Assembly: GCF_006345805.1 (NCBI RefSeq)
Contig: NC_043012.1
Coordinates: 13,392,001 to 13,456,000 of the forward strand
Direction: 5' to 3'
From: Octopus sinensis
Taxonomy: Eukaryota
DNA length: 64,000 bases
This document shows positions 3,717 through 63,599 of the stretch, one piece after another (within the stretch, counting starts at the first letter, position 1; every line of letters begins with the position of its first letter). Under the pieces are notes generated by a model that was not told where the DNA came from, did not search any database, and was given only the letters and a program-made list of their open reading frames with translations. The position numbers and the translations under genes were made by a program.

Positions 3717-4174
3717 GTGTGTGTGTAGACTGACACACACACCGACACAGAGGCCGACAGACAGATACACACACACACTAACGTTTATATATATATAGAT
3801 ATTTAATTTCCCTCCCTGTAATAATTATATGTAGCCATAATTTTATATGCACATATAATATTTCTTCTATTATCAAACTTGTAAAAAACACATCGTATAC
3901 TTACCCATGTGTGTGGCTCCTTTAAGTTTAGTGTGCACTGGATATGCATAATTCGTTTGTGTCTTTTGCAAGCATCTGTCTACTTATGTAGGCATACAAA
4001 TTGATAAAAATTACCTTGTTCAAACCGGTTTTACACTTACACGCACTTATACATACACACTCATGTGGTTGTACAAATGTATTTATCAATATATATATAT
4101 ATATTATATATATATATATATATACATATTTACACGCACATACACACACACACATACACACACACATACACACA

Positions 4175-4226
<52 letters not shown>

Positions 4227-4393
4227 CTGTTTGTGTGTTCCTGTCATTTTTTGTACATATATATTCGGTTTCAGCTGGTCATAAAGATCTTCGTCAGTAT
4301 CTTTGGTGGGAACTCACCACTGATCCATCAATTGCTTATCTCTTAAAAAGGTTTTTTCAATCCCTACTGTTGCATCATTACACTTACCTAATC

Positions 4394-5563
4394 ATGTTAA
4401 AACTTCAGATGCTTTGGTATATTTTGCCACATATTTTGCACGCTTCCTCGGGGAATTCGCAGCATAAGTTGAGAGAGAATCTGTTTAAGAATTATAGCAA
4501 CACAATAAGACCTGTTCTGTACACAGACACAATCACAGATGTGGATTTATTTCTCTTTCCCTATGAGATTTACAAATTAGATTTAGGAGCTGGATTACTT
4601 ACTGCAAAATTCGTTATTGGTTACAAATGGACTGATGAATTCTTAGTGTGGAATAAAAGCCAATATGATAATATATCATCAATCAAAATGCCTTTGGTAA
4701 AAGTTTGGGAACCTCATGCATACGTGTGTAATGCTGAAAAAGTATATAGAATCAGGACTCCAAAACCCGAAGCATTGATATTATCCAATGGCACAATACA
4801 AACATCCACTGCGTGGGTATATACCACCTACTGTAAAATTGACAATACTAAATATCCTTTTGACATTCAGAATTGCGAAGTAATCATTTGTTTACCGTTA
4901 AGTAAACTAAATAATGTGAGAATTAAAACAATTATGACATTTAAAAAACAAGTTACCGTAGGAACCTGGAAAGTAGAAATAGACAAAGTGTTACCAAATT
5001 ATAATAAAAGTATTTGTCATGCATCGTGGCACTTAACACTAACGAAATTATCAACACAGTCGAAAATAATAATAATCATTCCACCTTTTCTACTAACATG
5101 TGTAACGATTGCTACTTTTCTTTTGCCCCCAGATACGAAACAAAAAGTCACTTTTTCTACAAACAGTTTTCTATCGATAATGCTTTATTTATCAAACATG
5201 TCAAAGGATTTATCATACCGCACAGCCAACCATTCTCTTCTATGGATATATGTCTTTTGCTTATCATGCATCAGCGCAATATCATGTATCGAATCGATAC
5301 TTGTTTGTCGCATTTATGTTTACCAAAAGGGCCAGGATCAATGTCAAATGTCTGAAAGAACAATATCATCGAATGACGACGTAGATATAAGTGAAACATG
5401 TAACAAACACTTGAATAAGAAATGGTTCGATGAAAGGAACACAATGAAGAAAAAATGCAAACATTTGAAATTTTTCCAACATAGATATATTGATAACTTT
5501 TGCTTGGTCTTCTTCACGTTGTTCTTTTTAATAATAGGTATAATTTTGAATTACATTGCATAG
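4394..5563 (+). CDS. Cephalopod chemotactile receptor-like (atypical nAChR-derived) Cys-loop channel subunit, 389 aa, uninterrupted CDS (here CR-a)
   Basis: ATG at 4394 gives a signal peptide (MLKLQMLWYILPHILHASSG), then RPV, WxDxxLxW, WxP, Cys-loop C-KIDNTKYPFDIQN-C (13 residues) and four TM helices (IIIIPPFLL; KVTFSTNSFLS; LLWIYVFCL; IDNFCLVFF). No vicinal CC and no loop B Trp. The track's start at 4001 is an upstream microsatellite read-through. Confidence 0.93.
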   Translation: MLKLQMLWYILPHILHASSGNSQHKLRENLFKNYSNTIRPVLYTDTITDVDLFLFPYEIYKLDLGAGLLTAKFVIGYKWTDEFLVWNKSQYDNISSIKMPLVKVWEPHAYVCNAEKVYRIRTPKPEALILSNGTIQTSTAWVYTTYCKIDNTKYPFDIQNCEVIICLPLSKLNNVRIKTIMTFKKQVTVGTWKVEIDKVLPNYNKSICHASWHLTLTKLSTQSKIIIIIPPFLLTCVTIATFLLPPDTKQKVTFSTNSFLSIMLYLSNMSKDLSYRTANHSLLWIYVFCLSCISAISCIESILVCRIYVYQKGQDQCQMSERTISSNDDVDISETCNKHLNKKWFDERNTMKKKCKHLKFFQHRYIDNFCLVFFTLFFLIIGIILNYIA

Positions 5564-5773
5564 ATCATTCCTTATAAAAAGTTGAAAGTAATATATTAAG
5601 TGTAGCATATTAAATTCTTGCACGTAATTTTATGTTACGTACTAATAGTTACAATCATCCTAATATTACTGTTATTTTTTATTATTATTACTATTATAAT
5701 AACTATTATAATCATTTTTCTGGATTTTGCTCATTTTGTCATTATTGTTGTTGTTATTATCGTTATCATTATT

Positions 5774-5945
5774 AAGGCAGCGAACTGGCAGAATCGTCAG
5801 CCGGTCGAGCAAATTGCTTAACGGCATTTCATTTGTTTCTGCGTTCTGAGTTCAAATTTCCCCAATGATGAATTTTCTTTTCGTCATTTCAGATTGGGTA
5901 AAAAAAAAAAAATACCATATTGAGGTTAATGTGCCAAAACTTGAA
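5774..5945 (+). mobile_element. tRNA-derived SINE, family B (decayed)
   Basis: AAGGCAGCGAACTGGCAGAATCG...TTCTGAGTTCAAATT head, homologous to 6066-6300 and 55455-55662. Confidence 0.6.
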
Positions 5946-5973: not shown

Positions 5974-6575
<602 letters not shown>

Positions 6576-22000: not shown

Positions 22001-23164
22001 ATGTATGTTAAATTCTTATTTCTACCAACCGTCTTTGCTCTAGCAGTATCATGTAGCGAAGAAGTACTGTTACAAAAGGATTTGCTAACACATTACAATA
22101 AATATACAAGACCTGTACGAAATATAAATACAACTGTATTTGTTGATGTACGTGCATCTCTAAATAAACTTTATGATTTCAATGTATTTAAAGGAATACT
22201 CGTTGCAGAAATATATATTATAATGCGCTGGAAAGATGAATATCTTTGCTGGAACAAAACAGAGTATGGAAACGCAGAAAGTATCCTTTTACCTAAGGCT
22301 AACATTTGGACACCCAATATTTATATATGTAATGCTATCAAAATCATTGGCAATCATCGTTATGAACGTCAGGTTACGGTATGGCGGAATGGAAATGTAG
22401 AAGAAGAATCGTTTTATACATACCAACTATTCTGCGACGTTGATAATTCTCGATATCCGTTTGACGCACAACTTTGCCGCACGTATATATGCCTACCTTA
22501 TCAAAAGGACAACTTAACCCTGATTAAATCACTTCGTACAAATCCAGTAAGTGATATGGAAGGATGGCATATTGACACGAGTACTGAACCGCTGAAAACA
22601 TACAATGGCCAACAATTCGCAACTCTATCAATACGCTTAACCCGCACAGCTGTTATTAGCAGATTAATTATTATTTTACCGCCGATCATGCTGACGGTTT
22701 TAATAACATGCGCGTTTTTCTTACCAGCATCTGCAGGAGAGAAAGTAACATTTTCAACAACTGTTTTTCTTTCTAATATGGTTTATTTAATCGACAATAC
22801 CAACTTACTAACAAATACAGACGGGAAACTATGTTTGTTCCTGTTGTACCTAATGGGGCTGACAATCATGGGAGGAATTTCATGCATTAGTTCGATTTTG
22901 TTAAGTAGGATTTATATTTATCAGACTATACCGAGAACAACTGCAAAAATTAGTCCAATATCAACGGCAACAACAGAGAAAGAATCAAAAATAATTACTC
23001 AGGACACAAAATATTCCTTACCAAGAATATCATCATTAGAAGAGAGCAAAACCTCATTGAATGGAATGACGCGATGGGAAAAACTTGACAGATTCTTTTT
23101 TGTTCTGTCAACAACAATATTCATGATATTTACTTTGACTTTTGCAATACTTTATTCTCAATGA
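22001..23164 (+). CDS. Cephalopod chemotactile receptor-like Cys-loop channel subunit, 387 aa, uninterrupted CDS (here CR-b)
   Basis: Signal peptide MYVKFLFLPTVFALAVS, then YTRPV, WKDEYLCW, WTPNIYICNA, Cys-loop C-DVDNSRYPFDAQL-C, M1 IIILPPIML, GEK-M2, M3 and M4 (LDRFFFVL). No vicinal CC. The extracellular domain aligns without gaps to CR-a at roughly one-third identity by eye. Confidence 0.95.
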   Translation: MYVKFLFLPTVFALAVSCSEEVLLQKDLLTHYNKYTRPVRNINTTVFVDVRASLNKLYDFNVFKGILVAEIYIIMRWKDEYLCWNKTEYGNAESILLPKANIWTPNIYICNAIKIIGNHRYERQVTVWRNGNVEEESFYTYQLFCDVDNSRYPFDAQLCRTYICLPYQKDNLTLIKSLRTNPVSDMEGWHIDTSTEPLKTYNGQQFATLSIRLTRTAVISRLIIILPPIMLTVLITCAFFLPASAGEKVTFSTTVFLSNMVYLIDNTNLLTNTDGKLCLFLLYLMGLTIMGGISCISSILLSRIYIYQTIPRTTAKISPISTATTEKESKIITQDTKYSLPRISSLEESKTSLNGMTRWEKLDRFFFVLSTTIFMIFTLTFAILYSQ

Positions 23165-32328: not shown

Positions 32329-35300
32329 GATCTCTTTCGGCACCATCTTTGATCTTTTTCGGCACACTCTTTGATCTCTGTCGGCACCTCCTTTGATCTC
32401 TGTCGGCACCACTCTTTGATCTCTGTCGGCACCCATCTTTGATCTATGTCGGCATCCCCTTTGATCTCTGTCGGTACATCCTTTGATCTCTGTCGGCACC
32501 CCTCTTTGATCTCTTTCGGCAACCCTTTGGTCTCTCTCGGCACCCCTCTTTGATCTCTGTCGGCACCCCTCTTTGATCTCTGTCGGAACCCCTTTGATCT
32601 CTGTCGGCACCCCTCTTTGATCTCTGTCGGCACCCCTCTTTGATCTCTGTCGGCACCCCTTTGATCTCTGTCGACACCCCTCTTTGATCTCTGTCGGCAC
32701 CCCTCTTTGATTTCTGTCGGCACCCCTCTTTGATCTCTGTCGGAACCCCTCTTTGAACTCTGTCGGCACCCTCTTTTATCTCTGTAGGTACCTGTCGGCA
32801 CACCCCTCTTTGATCTCTGTCGGTACCCCTCTTTGATCTATGTCGGCACCCCTTTGATCTCTGTCGGCACCCCTCTTTGATCTCTGTTGGCACCACCTTT
32901 CATCTCTGTCGGCACCCCCTTTGATCTCTGTCGGCACCCCATTGATCTCTGTCGGCACCCTCTTTTATCTCTGTCGATACCCCTCTTTAATCTCTGTCGG
33001 TACACTTTTTGATCGCTTTCGGCACCCCTCTTTGATCTCTGTCGGCACCCCCTTTGATCTCTGTCGGCACCCCCTTTGATCTCTGTCGGCACCCCCTTTG
33101 ATCTCTGTCGGCACTCCCTTTGATCTCTGTCGGCCACCCCCCCTTGATCTCTGTCGGCACCCCTTTTTGATCTCTGTCGGCACCCCTCTTTGATCTCTGT
33201 CGGCACCTCTTTGATCTCTGTCGGCCGCCCTTTGATCTTTGTCAGCACCCATCTTTGATCTCTGTCGGCAACCCCCCTTTGATCTCTGTCGGCACCTCTT
33301 TGATTCTGTCGATACCTCCTTTGATCTCTGTCGGCACCACTTTGATCTCTGTCGGCACCCCTCTTTGATCTCTGTCGGCACGCCTTTGATCTCTGTCGGC
33401 ACCCTCTTTGATCTCTGTCGGCACCCCCTTTGATCTCTGTCGGCACCCCTCTTTGATTTCTGTCGGGACCCTCCTCCTTTGATCTCTGTCGGCACCCCTC
33501 TTTGATCTCTGTCGGCACCCCTCTTTGATCTCTGTCGGCACCCCTTTGATCTCTCTCACACCCCTTTTGATCTCTGTCGGCACCCTCTTTGATCTCTCTC
33601 GGCAACCCTCTTTGTCTCTTCTCTGTCGGCACCCCTTTGATTTCTGTCGACACCCTTTTTGATCTCTGTCGGCACCCCTCTTTGATCTCTGTCGGCAACC
33701 CCTCTTTGATCTCTGTCGGCACCCCTTTGATCTCTGTCGACACCCCTCTTGATCTCTGTCGGCACCCTCTTTGATTTCTGTCGGCACCCCTCTTTGATCT
33801 CTGTTGGAACCCCTCTTTGATCTCTGTCGGCACCCTCTTTTATCTCTGTAGGCACCTGTCGCACACCCCTTTGATCTCTGTCGGTACCCCTCTTTGATCT
33901 ATGTCGGCACCCCTTTGATCTCTGTCGGCACCCCTCTTTGATCTCTGTTGGCACCACCTTTCATCTCTGTCGGCACCCCCTTTGATCTCTGTCGGCACCC
34001 CATTGATCTCTGTCGGCACCCTCTTTTATCTCTGTCGATACCCCTCTTTAATCTCTGTCGGTACCCTTTTTGATCGCTTTCGGCACCCCTCTTTGATTTC
34101 TGTCGGCACCCCCTTTGATCTCTGTCGGCACTCCCTTTGATCTCTGTGCTCCCTCTGATCTCTGTCGGCACCCCTCTTTGATCTCTGTTGGCACCCCTTT
34201 GATCTCTGTCGACACCCTCTTTGATCTCTGTCGATACCCCTCTTTGATCTCTGTCGGCACCCTCTTTGATCTCTGTCGGCACCCTCTTTGATTCCTCTCG
34301 GCACCCCTCTTTGATCTCTGTCGGCACCCCTCTTTGATCTCTGTCGGCACCCCTTTGATCTCTGTCGGCACCCTATTTGATCTCTATCGGCACCCCTCTT
34401 TGATTTCTGTCGGCACACCCATTGATCTCTGTCGGTACCACTCTTTGATCTCTGTCGACACCCTCTTTTATCTCTGTCGATACCCCTCTTTGATCTCTTT
34501 CGGCACCCTCTTTGATCTCTGTCGGCACCCCTCTTTGATCTCTGTCGGCACCCCCTTTGATCTCTGTCGACAACCCTTTTTGATCTCTGTCAGCACCCCT
34601 CTTTGATCTCTGTCGGCACTCTCTTTGGTCTCCCTCGGCCTCCCCTTTGATCTCTGTCGGCACCCCTCTTTGATCTCTGTCGGCACCCCTCTTTGATCTC
34701 TGTCGACACCCCTCTTTGATCTCTGTCGGCACCCCCTTTGATCTCTCTCAGCACCCCTTTGATCTCTGTCAGCACCCCTCTTTGATCTCTGTCGGCACCC
34801 CTCTTTGATCTCTGTCGGCACCCTCTTTGATTCCTGTCGGCACCCCTCTTTGATCTCTGTCGGCACCCCTCTTTGATCTCTGTCGGCCCCCTCTTTGATT
34901 GCTGTCGGCACCCCTCTTTGATCTCCGTCGGCACCGCCTTTGGTCTCTGTCGGCACCCTCTTTGATCTCTGTCGCACACCCCGGACCCCTCTTTGATCTC
35001 TGTCGGCCCCCTTTGATCCCTGTCAGCACCCCTCTTTGTCTCTGTCGGCACCCACTTTGATCTTGTCGGCACCCTTTTTAACCTCTGTCGGCACCCCTCT
35101 TTGATCTCTGTCGGCACCCCCTTTGATCTCTGTCGGCACCCCTCTTTGATTTCTGTCGGGACCTCCTTTGATCTCTGTCGGCACCCCTCTTTGATCTCTG
35201 TCGGCACCCCTTAGATCTATGTCGGCACCCTATTTGATCTCTGTCGGCACCCCCTTCGATCTCTGTCGACACCTTCTTTGATCTCTGTCGGCACCCCTCT

Positions 35301-35356
35301 TTGATCTCTGTCGGTACCCCTCTTTGATCTCTGTCGGCACCCCTCTTTGATCTCTG
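32329..35356. repeat. Minisatellite, consensus CTTTGATCTCTGTCGGCACCCCT (23 bp, variants 21-24 bp), about 130 units
   Basis: Direct reading; copy number estimated as length divided by unit size. Confidence 0.97.
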
Positions 35357-55446: not shown

Positions 55447-55454
55447 TATAAACA

Positions 55455-55662
55455 GAAACGTTAGCACGCTGGGCGAAATGCGTAGCTGTATTTCGTCTGC
55501 CGTTACGTTCTGAGTTCAAATTCCGCCGAGGTCGACTTTGCCTTTCATCCTTTCGGGGTCGATAAATTAAGTACCAGTTACGCACTGGGGTCGACGTAAT
55601 CCGTTTATCAGTCCTTGTTTGTCCCCTCTGTGTTTAGCCTCTTGTGGGTAGTACAGAAATAT
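55455..55662 (+). mobile_element. tRNA-derived SINE, family B
   Basis: CGTTAGCACGCTGGGCGAAATG...TTCTGAGTTCAAATTCCGCCGAGGTCGACTTTGCCTTTCATCCTTTCGGGGTCGATAAATTAAGTACC. Confidence 0.8.
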
Positions 55663-59289: not shown

Positions 59290-59450
59290 AGTAGACAGAA
59301 TCTCTTCCGAGCAGGGCTCAAATTCCTCAGAGATTGACTTTGCCTTTCATCCTTTCGGAGTCGATAAAATAAGTACGCCTTGAATACTGGGGTGGATGTA
59401 ATAAACTTAGCCTCATCCCTGTAATTGTTGGCCGGGTGTCAAAATTATTA
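59290..59450 (+). mobile_element. SINE family B fragment
   Basis: TCAAATTCC...GACTTTGCCTTTCATCCTTTCGGAGTCGATAAAATAAGTAC. Confidence 0.65.
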
Positions 59451-62319: not shown

Positions 62320-63450
62320 TTCTTCTTTCAAATTTTCTTCCATTTCTTGCCGAGTGTCTTCCCGACTCCTAGGGCAAAGAAACTCATAGTGTATATTGGT
62401 AGGCCATTAAACCAAACTCAGTAGTTCGTTCATTTTTTTTAAAATTAATATACATGAGCAGCAACAGTTCTCACATCGACAATGCTCTTCTCAATACGTG
62501 TGATGTACCAGTTAAGACAATCTTTTGCACTTCTTGCAGGGATGGTAAGCCAGGGATCATTCTCATATAATTTTCGGTTCCCTTCTTGATCATTCCTAGT
62601 GCTCCTACGATCACTAGTATTGTAACCGCCTTGAGATGCCACATTTTCTCAACTTCAATGGGTAGGTCTTTATATTTTCTGAGCTTGGGATGCTCATGTC
62701 GATCAATAAGCAAACTTTATTGTTTTGGTCTTTCACAACAATATCTGGTTTATTGGCCTTGATGGTTCGGTCTGTATGTACTGGAAAGTCCCACAGAATG
62801 GTTACATTTTCTCCTTCAGTTACAGCCTCAGGGTGGTGATTATACCACTTGTCGGCAGTTTTGATATTGTAATGCCGACTTATTAGCCAGTGGAGATATT
62901 GGCCAACTCTGTCATGTCTTAATTTATACTCCACTGGTGCTAAGACTTTACATCCAGAGATTAAGTGGTCCACTGTTTCAATCATGTCGTTGCAGAATCG
63001 GCATTTTGGGTCTGCTCCATTTTTCATCACATTGGCCTGGTAGTTCTGGGTTAATAGGCTTTGGTCTTGAGCAGCCACGATGAAACCTTCGCTCTCTGCT
63101 TTTAGCCCTGAGCTCCGCACCCACTGATGGGTTTGATTCTGGTCAACATCAGCTTGTTTGCTGCGGGTCACATATTTGCCGTGCAGAGGTTTCTCCTCCC
63201 ACCTATCAGCCAATTGCTCGTGCGCTTTTTTCATTGCCATCATTTTCACCTTCTTTGCAACAATAGTTGTCGTACTTCCCTCGGGTTGTTCAGTTTGGGT
63301 ATCCTGCACGAGATCAATAGCAAATTTTTTGCTTTCCTTGATGATAGAATGAAGCTTCTTTCGTCTCTCGTGATTTTCCACGAGCTTTAGCATCCAGTCA
63401 TTCGATATTTCGAGATATTTGGCCAGTCCAATTGTGGTTGTTTTGTAAGC
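62320..63450 (-). mobile_element. R4/Dong-like LINE 3' portion (different subfamily), best-preserved copy
   Basis: WEEKPLHGKY, THQWVRSSGLKAESEGFIVAAQDQ, CRFCNDMIETVDHLISGC, LWDFPVHTDRTIKANKPDIVV..CLLIDMSIP (REL PD..D), then a frameshift to KLRKYKDL...GTSHVLRRALSM*; (TAA)n on both sides. Confidence 0.92.
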
Positions 63451-63482
63451 TAGTTTTATTATTATTATTATTATTATTATTA

Positions 63483-63517
<35 letters not shown>

Positions 63518-63545
63518 TGTATTATTATTATTATTATTATTATTA

Positions 63546-63589
<44 letters not shown>

Positions 63590-63599
63590 GCCATTACCT

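What the first reader, a model, noticed from the sequence alone, without database searches (positions are those of the whole stretch)
5138..5206. Opposite pore electrostatics in neighbouring receptors
Seen: CR-a M2 region is DTKQK-VTFSTNSFLSIMLYLSNMSK, giving -2' Lys, -1' Gln, 6' Asn, 13' Leu and 20' Lys. CR-b (22739-22804) is SAGEK-VTFSTTVFLSNMVYLIDNTN, giving -1' Glu, 13' Val and 17' Asp. Known: the -1' Glu ring is the main determinant of cation selectivity and Ca2+ permeability in nAChRs, while anion channels use a -2' Pro/-1' Ala motif, which CR-a also lacks. Inference: CR-b is a conventional cation channel; CR-a may be low-conductance, Ca2+-impermeable, less cation-selective, or a modulatory subunit that retunes heteromers, giving a route to inhibitory or graded taste-by-touch coding.
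Basis: partly seen in the sequence, partly recalled or inferred. Interest (0 to 1): 0.7.

Follow-up and report, generated by a model that had tools for sequence, protein, structure and literature searches.

The report
Octopus taste receptor with altered pore
Two neighbouring octopus "taste-by-touch" receptor genes differ at the ion filter of their channel: one keeps the usual Gly-Glu-Lys motif, while the other has a conserved Lys-Gln-Lys that should reduce calcium and cation flow, though this has not been measured.

Summary
Window 4394-5563 (+) (CR-a, 389 aa) and 22001-23164 (+) (CR-b, 387 aa) are intact, intronless Cys-loop receptor genes. Their best sequence and fold match is the solved octopus chemotactile receptor CRT1.

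The M2 register is correct, because M1-M3 aligns without gaps to CRT1 and to 5-HT3A. CR-a reads T-K-Q-K where CR-b, CRT1 and 175 of 184 related M2 segments have an acidic -1' residue, usually in G-E-K/R.

K-Q-K is derived. CR-a and CR-b are sister lineages, apparently tandem duplicates. The motif is identical in two orthologues (81% and 68% identical). The CR-a pore domain is under purifying selection (M1-M3 dN/dS 0.16 at dS 0.43).

"Opposite electrostatics" overstates the difference:
- 13' Leu and 20' Lys are shared with CRT1, a Ca2+-permeable cation channel.
- 6' Asn is absent from the orthologues.
- Both genes have Lys at the vestibule site that is usually Asp in cationic relatives.

The real difference is confined to -2'/-1'. 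The closest precedents are 5-HT3B (-1' Ala) and muscle nAChR epsilon (G-Q-K). I think CR-a most likely lowers Ca2+ permeability and conductance, probably within heteromers. An anion-permeable homomer is not excluded. It is a variant of a known family and of moderate interest. No function was tested.

The parts
4394..5563 (+). CR-a: intronless chemotactile-receptor-like Cys-loop subunit gene (389 aa plus stop)
   Evidence: Continuous ORF. Pfam Neur_chan_LBD, E 4.5e-29. Best PDB sequence match is CRT1 8eis/9e6b, E 1e-46. Best fold match is 8eis_A, TM 0.88, rmsd 2.4 A. Whole-gene dN/dS against the orthologue is 0.50, p=2e-5.
4832..4876 (+). CR-a Cys-loop (C147-x13-C161, CKIDNTKYPFDIQNC)
   Evidence: Read directly from the sequence. 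C147, P155, D157 and C161 are invariant in the alignments.
4733..4765 (+). CR-a extracellular vestibule loop (A114-K124, AEKVYRIRTPK), net basic. K116 aligns with 5-HT3A Asp127 and with an Asp in CRT1.
   Evidence: Ungapped phmmer alignments to CRT1 and 5-HT3A and the CR alignment. The significance of this position is described in PMC3091210, and that of the CRT1 E104 loop in bioRxiv 10.1101/2025.03.03.641191. Loop alignment is less certain than the M2 alignment.
5138..5146 (+). CR-a selectivity-filter codons AAA CAA AAA = K249(-2') Q250(-1') K251(0'), replacing the ancestral G-E-K
   Evidence: Identical in orthologues P0001 and P0002.
5138..5209 (+). CR-a M2 pore helix (K249-L272): 2' Thr, 6' Asn, 9' Leu, 13' Leu, 16' Ser, 17' Asn, 20' Lys
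   Evidence: AlphaFold helix 249-272. Ungapped alignment to CRT1 M2. M2 dN/dS is 0.08, but the sample is small.
5405..5560 (+). CR-a predicted MA helix (338-353, Lys-rich) and M4 (363-388)
   Evidence: AlphaFold secondary structure. A basic MA stretch is also seen in CRT1-like paralogues, so it does not discriminate.
22001..23164 (+). CR-b: intronless chemotactile-receptor-like Cys-loop subunit gene (387 aa plus stop), 35% identical to CR-a and sister to it in the tree
   Evidence: Orthologue P0004 is 74% identical. dN/dS is 0.36.
22433..22477 (+). CR-b Cys-loop (C145-x13-C159, CDVDNSRYPFDAQLC)
   Evidence: Read directly from the sequence.
22736..22804 (+). CR-b M2 with the conventional filter G246(-2') E247(-1') K248(0'), 13' Val, 17' Asp. 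The -4' position is Ser, so the cytoplasmic acidic ring is missing.
   Evidence: Orthologue P0004 has SSGERVTFSTTVFLSNMVYLIDNTS.

Best explanation
CR-a and CR-b are two intact, tandemly duplicated members of the cephalopod chemotactile receptor (CR) family of nicotinic-receptor-derived ion channels.

CR-b keeps the ancestral cation filter, G-E-K at -2'/-1'/0'. The CR-a lineage replaced it with K-Q-K. This removes the ring of five -1' carboxylates and places a ring of lysines at the narrow cytoplasmic mouth of the pore. The change has been kept under purifying selection in at least three octopod genomes.

Inferred mechanism (not shown): a CR-a subunit lowers the local negative potential at the selectivity filter. 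This would reduce or abolish Ca2+ permeability and lower single-channel cation conductance. It most probably does this as one subunit of heteromeric CR pentamers that also contain Glu-bearing subunits. Precedents are 5-HT3B in 5-HT3A/B receptors and the Gln-bearing gamma/epsilon subunits of muscle nicotinic receptors. The effect would be to tune the ionic signal produced by a given chemical contact.

Shown here: gene identity, register, derived state, conservation and selective constraint. Inferred: the effect on permeation and the heteromeric role.
For: - Identity: Pfam LBD; best PDB sequence hit CRT1, E 1e-46, ungapped across M1-M3; AlphaFold model with M2 at 249-272; best fold hit CRT1, TM 0.88; an 18-leaf clade with CRT1 in an NJ tree of 145 receptor units, with the CR-a and CR-b lineages as sisters.
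- Derived state and rarity: all other CR-clade lineages have G-E-K/R. 175 of 184 related M2 segments are acidic at -1' and 162 of 184 have Gly at -2'.
- Constraint: the motif is identical in P0001 and P0002. M1-M3 dN/dS is 0.16 (Fisher p=2e-6) at dS 0.43, and the whole gene is 0.50 (p=2e-5).
- Functional analogies from the literature: alpha7 E-1'A abolishes Ca2+ permeability. 5-HT3B has -1' Ala and 20' Asn, needs 5-HT3A to reach the surface, and lowers PCa/PCs from 1.1-1.4 to 0.5-0.6 (PMC2443672).
- Natural precedent: muscle nAChR epsilon reads G-Q-K in solved structures.
- CRs are reported to form homo- and heteropentamers (PMC11526382).
Against: - No expression, assembly or electrophysiological data for CR-a could be obtained. 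The orthologue contigs are genomic, not transcripts, because their ends are microsatellites.
- CR-a keeps an acidic -4' Asp, which could partly compensate.
- In alpha7, E-1'A alone does not remove monovalent cation selectivity, so the size of the effect is uncertain.
- Heteromeric partnership is assumed by analogy only.
- ECD dN/dS of 0.61 shows fast evolution. This is typical of chemoreceptors but is also compatible with some relaxation of constraint.
- The survey is based on representatives at 50% identity. A 2026 preprint reports 'mixed' TM2 motifs in the CR clade (PMC13174522), so CR-a may not be the only non-GEK CR.
Confidence: 0.5

Rival explanations
1. [quoted passage not shown] Activation would then shunt or inhibit the sensory cell instead of exciting it. 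This would be an anion-permeable pLGIC that arose without the canonical -2' Pro/-1' Ala motif.
For: - Per subunit, the filter region -5' to 0' has net charge +1 in CR-a (D, K, K), 0 in CR-b and -1 in CRT1.
- 5-HT3A E-1'A alone gives PNa/PCl 0.89, and adding a basic residue at 19' gives 0.37 (PMC3091210). CR-a combines a neutral -1' with Lys at -2' and 20'.
- A single Arg ring at 9' gives the muscle AChR a Cl- conductance at positive potentials (PMC6800317).
- K116 occupies the vestibule position that is Lys in anion-selective pLGICs (PMC3091210).
Against: - There is no Pro insertion, and the M1-M2 linker has the cation-type length, ungapped against CRT1.
- 13' is Leu, not Thr.
- alpha7 needed E237A, V251T and the Pro insertion together for anion selectivity (PMC6800317).
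- 20' Lys and the vestibule Lys also occur in Glu-bearing CRs, so they do not by themselves make a channel anionic.
- The -4' Asp is retained.
- Whether homomers form at all is unknown.
Confidence: 0.15
2. The K-Q-K filter is functionally near-neutral. Other determinants (-4' Asp, polar 2'/6' rings, vestibule, portals) keep CR-a an ordinary non-selective cation channel, and the difference from CR-b has little physiological meaning.
For: - A -1' Gln is tolerated in muscle nAChR epsilon within a good cation channel.
- Extracellular and MA-helix residues are strong independent determinants of Ca2+ permeability and conductance (PMC3091210, PMC2443672). In CRT1, vestibule residue E104 tunes Ca2+ permeation.
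- The -4' Asp is retained.
Against: - In epsilon only one of the five -1' residues is Gln. A CR-a homomer would have none acidic.
- A basic residue at -2' is very rare: 5 of 184 segments, 3 of them the CR-a lineage.
- Strict conservation of K-Q-K across about 0.35 synonymous substitutions per site, with the pore domain the most constrained part of the gene, argues that the motif matters.
Confidence: 0.2
3. CR-a is a non-conducting or decaying copy, either a recently relaxed duplicate or a silent subunit, and the filter change reflects loss of channel function.
For: - dN/dS is fairly high in the ECD (0.61) and in ICD+M4 (0.68, not significantly below 1).
- No transcript evidence was found.
- The exact protein is not on record in the public gene-call collection.
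Against: - The ORF is intact, with signal peptide, Cys-loop, four TM helices and 9' Leu, in the window and in P0002 (full length). P0001 is also intact as far as its 335-aa model extends.
- M1-M3 dN/dS is 0.16, p=2e-6.
- The motif is unchanged in three genomes.
- High ECD rates are expected for chemoreceptors under diversifying selection (PMC11526382).
Confidence: 0.07

Closest known systems
Octopus chemotactile receptor CRT1 (PDB 8EIS, 9E6B) and the cephalopod CR family
   Same: It is the best sequence and fold match and falls in the same clade. Shared features are an intronless gene, the Cys-loop, no loop-C Cys pair, and the M2 framework (VxxxTxxFLSxxxYL, 9' Leu, 13' Leu, 20' Lys).
   Different: CRT1 has E(-4') S G E(-1') K and an acidic vestibule loop (MDKSEEND, carrying E104). 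CR-a has D T K Q K and a basic loop (AEKVYRIRTPK). Overall identity is only about 30%. The ligands of CR-a and CR-b are unknown.
5-HT3B subunit of the 5-HT3A/B receptor
   Same: A natural subunit of a cationic Cys-loop receptor that lacks the -1' Glu (it has Ala) and the 20' acid. In heteromers it lowers Ca2+ permeability (PMC2443672).
   Different: It belongs to a different subfamily. 5-HT3B is documented to depend on 5-HT3A, whereas dependence of CR-a on a partner is unknown. CR-a has Gln rather than Ala at -1', and Lys at -2'.
Muscle nicotinic receptor gamma/epsilon subunits
   Same: They have a -1' Gln in a G-Q-K motif (epsilon chains 9avv_B, 9dmg_B and others). Epsilon also has 6' Asn, as the window CR-a does. 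They are obligate heteromeric, non-alpha subunits.
   Different: They keep Gly at -2'. There is only one such subunit per pentamer. They form part of an acetylcholine-gated synaptic receptor.
Engineered selectivity mutants of alpha7 and 5-HT3A (E-1'A, with or without Pro insertion, V13'T or S19'R)
   Same: Neutralising -1' and adding basic residues near the pore ends reduces Ca2+ permeability and erodes cation selectivity (PMC2443672, PMC3091210, PMC6800317).
   Different: These are laboratory constructs. Full anion selectivity needed a Pro insertion and 13' Thr, and CR-a lacks both.
Molluscan anion-selective nAChR-like subunits (Lymnaea) and the 'Inhibitory-CL' clade
   Same: They show that nAChR-derived subunits in molluscs can switch charge selectivity through TM2 changes (PMC13174522, citing van Nierop 2005).
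   Different: Those carry PAR-type motifs, which CR-a does not. They also lie outside the CR clade.

Membership tests
Cys-loop pentameric ligand-gated ion channels (nicotinic-like branch) | Neurotransmitter-gated ion-channel ligand-binding domain | tested here: met
   Pfam PF02931: E 4.5e-29 for CR-a and 2.5e-30 for CR-b.
Cys-loop pentameric ligand-gated ion channels (nicotinic-like branch) | Cys-loop C-x13-C with the central xPFD motif | tested here: met
   CR-a has CKIDNTKYPFDIQNC and CR-b has CDVDNSRYPFDAQLC.
Cys-loop pentameric ligand-gated ion channels (nicotinic-like branch) | Four transmembrane helices, with M2 carrying the 9' Leu gate | tested here: met
   The AlphaFold model of CR-a has helices at 225-241, 249-272, 282-319 and 363-388. 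9' Leu is present in both genes.
Cys-loop pentameric ligand-gated ion channels (nicotinic-like branch) | Cation filter G-E-K/R at -2'/-1'/0' | tested here: not met
   CR-a has K-Q-K. CR-b meets the feature with G-E-K.
Cephalopod chemotactile receptors (CR) | Falls in the clade that contains functionally and structurally characterised CRs (CRT1) | tested here: met
   An NJ tree of 145 units gives an 18-leaf clade with CRT1. This is a distance tree without bootstrap support. The best PDB sequence and fold hits are CRT1.
Cephalopod chemotactile receptors (CR) | Intronless coding sequence, arranged in tandem gene clusters | tested here: met
   Each gene is a single continuous ORF. The two genes lie 16.4 kb apart on the same strand. 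The intronless structure of CRs is stated in PMC13174522.
Cephalopod chemotactile receptors (CR) | Loss of canonical acetylcholine-binding signatures (the loop-C vicinal Cys pair) | tested here: met
   There is no CC dipeptide anywhere in CR-a or CR-b (sequences). Loop-C regions are aligned.
Cephalopod chemotactile receptors (CR) | Expression in sucker chemosensory cells | not testable with these tools
   No transcript data were available. The Logan contigs carrying the orthologues are genomic.
Cephalopod chemotactile receptors (CR) | Gating by poorly soluble or hydrophobic contact ligands, not by acetylcholine | not testable with these tools
   This needs electrophysiology.
Anion-selective Cys-loop receptors | The -2' Pro / -1' Ala (PAR) motif, with an M1-M2 linker one residue longer | tested here: not met
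   CR-a has T-K-Q-K and aligns to CRT1 and 5-HT3A without a gap.
Anion-selective Cys-loop receptors | A polar 13' residue (Thr) | tested here: not met
   CR-a has 13' Leu and CR-b has 13' Val.
Anion-selective Cys-loop receptors | A basic residue at the vestibule position equivalent to nAChR alpha1 Asp97 / 5-HT3A Asp127 | tested here: inconclusive
   CR-a K116 and CR-b K114 align with 5-HT3A D127. Some Glu-bearing CRs also have Lys there (P0010), and loop alignment is uncertain.
Accessory pore-tuning subunits (5-HT3B-like, muscle gamma/epsilon-like) | A non-acidic -1' residue within an otherwise cationic receptor family | tested here: met
   CR-a has Q250. Epsilon G-Q-K was verified in PDB chains. 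5-HT3B -1' Ala is taken from PMC2443672.
Accessory pore-tuning subunits (5-HT3B-like, muscle gamma/epsilon-like) | Requires a Glu-bearing partner subunit for assembly or function | not testable with these tools
   This needs co-expression and co-assembly experiments.

The most novel reading that the evidence does not exclude
CR-a homomers, or CR-a-rich heteromers, are non-selective or anion-permeable. That would give the octopus sucker an ionotropic chemoreceptor that shunts or inhibits rather than excites. It would also represent a switch in charge selectivity achieved by a natural K-Q-K filter, without the canonical Pro/Ala motif.
Probability: 0.13. Interest if true: 0.8.

Novelty: new variant of a known kind. 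Interest (0 to 1): 0.45.

Why it matters
Chemotactile receptors are a recently described sensory receptor family. They are described as non-selective cation channels that assemble as homo- and heteropentamers. For CRT1, Ca2+ permeation is itself a tuned signalling variable.

A conserved CR lineage that has lost the -1' Glu ring and gained a -2' Lys would be a natural pore-tuning subunit. It offers a direct handle on how subunit mixing diversifies the ionic output of taste-by-touch cells.

It is also a natural test of selectivity-filter rules that have mostly been derived from engineered mutants of nicotinic and 5-HT3 receptors. The prediction can be tested with swaps of two residues.

Tried and rejected
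1. Word-indexed homologue searches with CR-a, CR-b and a 17-sequence CR profile returned only 2-5 relevant proteins. A species-named survey of all CRs was therefore not possible. The exhaustive representative search was used instead.

2. I first read the three 1.57-kb Logan contigs that carry the CR-a orthologue as transcripts. I rejected this because the contig ends are (CA)n and (GTT)n microsatellites, so they are genomic unitigs. There is therefore no expression evidence.

3. The key primary papers were not held in the library: van Giesen 2020, Allard 2023, Kang 2023, and Cymes & Grosman 2012 and 2016. What I say about them rests on secondary citations or on my own knowledge, and is marked as such.

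4. I considered the basic MA-helix stretch of CR-a (NKKWFDERNTMKKKCKHLK) as a 5-HT3A-like brake on conductance. I rejected it as a discriminating feature because CRT1-like paralogues are similarly basic there.

5. I considered an A-to-I RNA editing idea, since AAA CAA AAA is A-rich and CAA to CGA would mimic the GluA2 Q/R site. The local 300-nt RNA fold is no more stable than shuffled sequence (z = +0.66), so there is no support.

6. I looked for further CR genes or fragments in the window by tblastn and found none.

7. Looking up the orthologues' species through the SRA run numbers gave an unrelated paper.

8. Exact-sequence lookups of CR-a and P0001 in the gene-call collection found nothing.
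Full report
**What is in the sequence.** The window holds two complete single-exon ORFs on the + strand. CR-a runs from 4394 to 5563 (389 aa, from the ATG at 4394). CR-b runs from 22001 to 23164 (387 aa). tblastn with both proteins finds no further copies or fragments in the 64 kb. Window 5138-5206 encodes KQKVTFSTNSFLSIMLYLSNMSK (K249-K271), and 22739-22804 encodes EKVTFSTTVFLSNMVYLIDNTN (E247-N268). The window is AT-rich (35% GC) and full of microsatellites, as expected for a cephalopod genome. The species could not be named with the tools available.

**What the genes are.** Both proteins carry the Pfam ligand-binding domain of neurotransmitter-gated channels and a C-x13-C Cys-loop with the PFD core. 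Against all PDB sequences, CR-a's best hits are the octopus chemotactile receptor CRT1 (8EIS, 9E6B; E about 1e-46), well ahead of 5-HT3A, nicotinic alpha7 and the squid receptor CRB1. An AlphaFold model of CR-a (mean pLDDT 76.5) has the expected beta-sandwich. Its helices are M1 225-241, M2 249-272, M3 282-319, MA 338-353 and M4 363-388. Its best structural match is CRT1 chain 8eis_A (TM 0.88 normalised to the target, rmsd 2.4 A).

In a neighbour-joining tree of 145 receptor units drawn from the 150 best hits of an exhaustive profile search, CR-a, CR-b and CRT1 fall in one 18-leaf clade. Within it, the CR-a lineage (CR-a, P0001, P0002) and the CR-b lineage (CR-b, P0004) are sister groups. Neither protein contains a vicinal Cys pair. 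Both genes are intronless and lie 16.4 kb apart on the same strand. They are therefore two anciently duplicated tandem members of the CR family, now 35% identical. The tree is a distance tree without bootstrap support, so I hold the sister relationship with moderate confidence.

**Is the register right?** Yes. CR-a aligns without any gap from M1 through M3 to CRT1 (LLPPESGEKVSLATTIFLSNVLYLVQIDK) and to mouse 5-HT3A (LPPDSGERVSFKITLLLGYSVFLIIVSD). The conserved basic residue K251 is therefore 0', Q250 is -1', K249 is -2' and D247 is -4'. In CR-b, K248 is 0', E247 is -1', G246 is -2' and S244 is -4'. The predicted M2 helix starts at K249.

**How unusual is it?** I extracted M2 from every receptor unit in the 150 nearest representatives, which gave 184 segments from 148 proteins.
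- -1' is Glu in 170, Asp in 5, and non-acidic in 9. Three of those 9 are the CR-a lineage.
- -2' is Gly in 162 and basic in 5, three of them the CR-a lineage.
- Within the CR clade, every other lineage has [S/T/A]-G-E-[K/R].

Because the sister lineage and all other members of the clade have G-E-K, K-Q-K is the derived state. By contrast, 13' Leu and 20' Lys each occur in 19 of 184 segments and are present in CRT1 itself. 6' Asn (8 of 184) is Thr in both CR-a orthologues. So only the -2'/-1' pair is a robust feature specific to this lineage.

**Is it maintained?** The two closest database proteins are P0001 (81% identical; UniParc UPI0006957214) and P0002 (68%; Logan assemblies of three sequencing runs). 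Both read PPDTKQKVTFSTTSFLSIMLYLS[N/K]MSK. P0002's genomic contig is colinear with the window, including non-coding flanks, at 77% nucleotide identity. Nei-Gojobori estimates for CR-a against that orthologue are:

| Region | dN/dS | dS | Fisher p |
|---|---|---|---|
| Whole gene | 0.50 | 0.35 | 2e-5 |
| Extracellular domain | 0.61 | 0.32 | 0.02 |
| M1-M3 | 0.16 | 0.43 | 2e-6 |

Within M2 there is 1 non-synonymous against 3 synonymous changes. CR-b has an orthologue from the same sequencing project (P0004, 74% identical, SSGERV...; dN/dS 0.36). So the duplication predates the split of these species, and both genes are constrained. In CR-a the pore domain is the most constrained part. A pseudogene explanation is therefore unlikely.

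There is no evidence of transcription. The orthologue contigs end in microsatellites and are genomic.

**Electrostatics along the whole pathway.** Per subunit, the region from -5' to 0' carries:
- D, K, K (net +1) in CR-a;
- E, K (net 0) in CR-b;
- E, E, K (net -1) in CRT1.

At the outer end of M2, CR-a has K20' and D21', CRT1 has D19' and K20', and CR-b has D17'.

In the extracellular vestibule, published work on 5-HT3A shows that Asp127 (nAChR alpha1 Asp97) strongly controls Ca2+ permeability and conductance. That position is Asp in virtually all cationic members and Lys in anionic ones (PMC3091210). In the ungapped alignment, this Asp aligns with K116 of CR-a and with K114 of CR-b, whereas CRT1 has Asp there. 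The adjacent CRT1 loop (MDKSEEND) is acidic. On the sequence numbering of 8EIS it contains E104, which is reported to tune CRT1's Ca2+ permeation (bioRxiv 10.1101/2025.03.03.641191). The aligned loops of CR-a (AEKVYRIRTPK) and CR-b (AIKIIGNHRYERQ) are basic.

Both window receptors therefore differ from CRT1 in the vestibule, and CR-b has also lost the -4' acid. "Conventional" describes CR-b's -1' ring only. "Opposite electrostatics" is an overstatement. The basic MA stretch of CR-a is shared with CRT1-like paralogues and does not discriminate.

**What it most likely does.** Established results for this superfamily, as cited in papers I could read:
- alpha7 E-1'A abolishes Ca2+ permeability (PMC2443672).
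- 5-HT3B has -1' Ala and 20' Asn and depends on 5-HT3A for surface expression. It lowers PCa/PCs of the heteromer from 1.1-1.4 to 0.5-0.6 (PMC2443672).
- 5-HT3A E-1'A is essentially non-selective (PNa/PCl 0.89), and with S19'R it becomes modestly anion-selective (0.37) (PMC3091210).
- Full anion conversion of alpha7 needed E237A, V251T and a Pro insertion (PMC6800317).
- Solved muscle nicotinic receptors show that the epsilon subunit naturally reads G-Q-K, with 6' Asn.
- CRs are described as non-selective cation channels that form homo- and heteropentamers (PMC11526382).

From my own memory of van Giesen et al. 2020, which I could not read here, different CRs and CR combinations were reported to differ in ion permeation.

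Putting these together, my best reading (about 0.5) is that CR-a is a functional CR subunit whose K-Q-K filter lowers Ca2+ permeability and cation conductance, most plausibly by tuning heteromers. The rivals are:
- a non-selective or anion-permeable homomer (about 0.15);
- a near-neutral change buffered by other determinants (about 0.2);
- a silent or decaying copy (about 0.07).

The anion reading is weakened because there is no Pro insertion and no 13' Thr, and because 20' Lys and the vestibule Lys also occur in Glu-bearing CRs.

**Novelty.** The family, the idea that CR subunit composition diversifies ionic signals, and the existence of Cys-loop subunits without a -1' Glu are all known. A 2026 preprint that extracted TM2 motifs across molluscan nAChR-like genes already states that the CR clade shows "mixed ion selectivity patterns" (PMC13174522). 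It gives no details that I could access. In the material I could reach, I found no description of the following:
- the specific, conserved K-Q-K filter of this lineage;
- its derived origin next to a G-E-K sister gene;
- the selective constraint on it.

I rate it a new variant of a known kind, of moderate interest. It is readily testable with two-residue swaps in CRT1, for which agonists are known.

**Limits.**
- The survey covers cluster representatives at 50% identity and only the best 150 hits.
- The word-indexed searches were nearly empty.
- The species of the window and of the orthologues are unnamed, apart from O. bimaculoides for P0010 and P0012.
- The tree is NJ only.
- Loop alignments in the vestibule are less secure than the M2 alignment.
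- Nothing about expression, assembly, ligands or permeation was or could be measured.

Noticed in passing
window 32329-35356: A 3-kb minisatellite of about 134 copies of a 23-bp unit (GATCTCTGTCGGCACCCCTCTTT, 81% matches). It produces many long spurious ORFs on the minus strand (PTEIKEGCRQRSKRGADRDQRG...), which have no Pfam match.
   Followed up: partly
window 62614-63594 (-): A 326-aa ORF with a weak zf-RVT hit (zinc-binding region of reverse transcriptases, E 4e-4, below Pfam's cut-off), preceded by a poly-Ile run from an (ATT)n repeat. It is probably a retrotransposon remnant.
   Followed up: partly
window 6068-6200, 55453-55572, 59318-59374 (a diverged copy is also visible at about 5780-5870): A short interspersed repeat (AAGGCGGCGTGTTGGCAGTATCGTTAGCACGCCGGGTGAAATACTT...) that sits next to long (ATT)n/(ATC)n microsatellites just downstream of CR-a. 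There are 3 copies at 80-100% identity in the window. ARAGORN and Rfam find no tRNA or RNA family anywhere in the window.
   Followed up: partly
window 4739-4741 (CR-a K116) and 22340-22342 (CR-b K114): Both receptors have Lys at the vestibule position where almost all cationic Cys-loop receptors have Asp (5-HT3A D127 / nAChR alpha1 D97) and where CRT1 has Asp. The neighbouring loop, acidic in CRT1 (which carries E104 there), is basic in both. This could lower Ca2+ permeation in both genes independently of M2.
   Followed up: partly
window 22730-22732 (CR-b S244, the -4' position): CR-b and its orthologue P0004 have lost the acidic -4' (cytoplasmic ring) residue. CR-a (Asp), CRT1 (Glu) and 112 of 184 related M2 segments keep it. 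CR-b is therefore not fully canonical either.
   Followed up: no
Both orthologues have Thr, which is the family consensus. The muscle nAChR epsilon subunit also has 6' Asn.
   Followed up: yes
related proteins P0006, P0008, P0009, P0011, P0028, P0031 and others: Many of the nearest database 'proteins' are 600-1470 aa and contain 2-8 complete receptor units. They look like tandem intronless receptor genes fused by automatic gene prediction, so family counts from such annotations will be too low.
   Followed up: no
L001 1-25 and 1550-1572; window flanks of CR-a (about 4050-4230 and 5650-5760): Microsatellites flank the CR-a gene in both the window and the orthologous contig, and the short-read assemblies break exactly at them. 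The non-coding flanks are still about 77% identical between the two species, similar to the coding region.
   Followed up: partly
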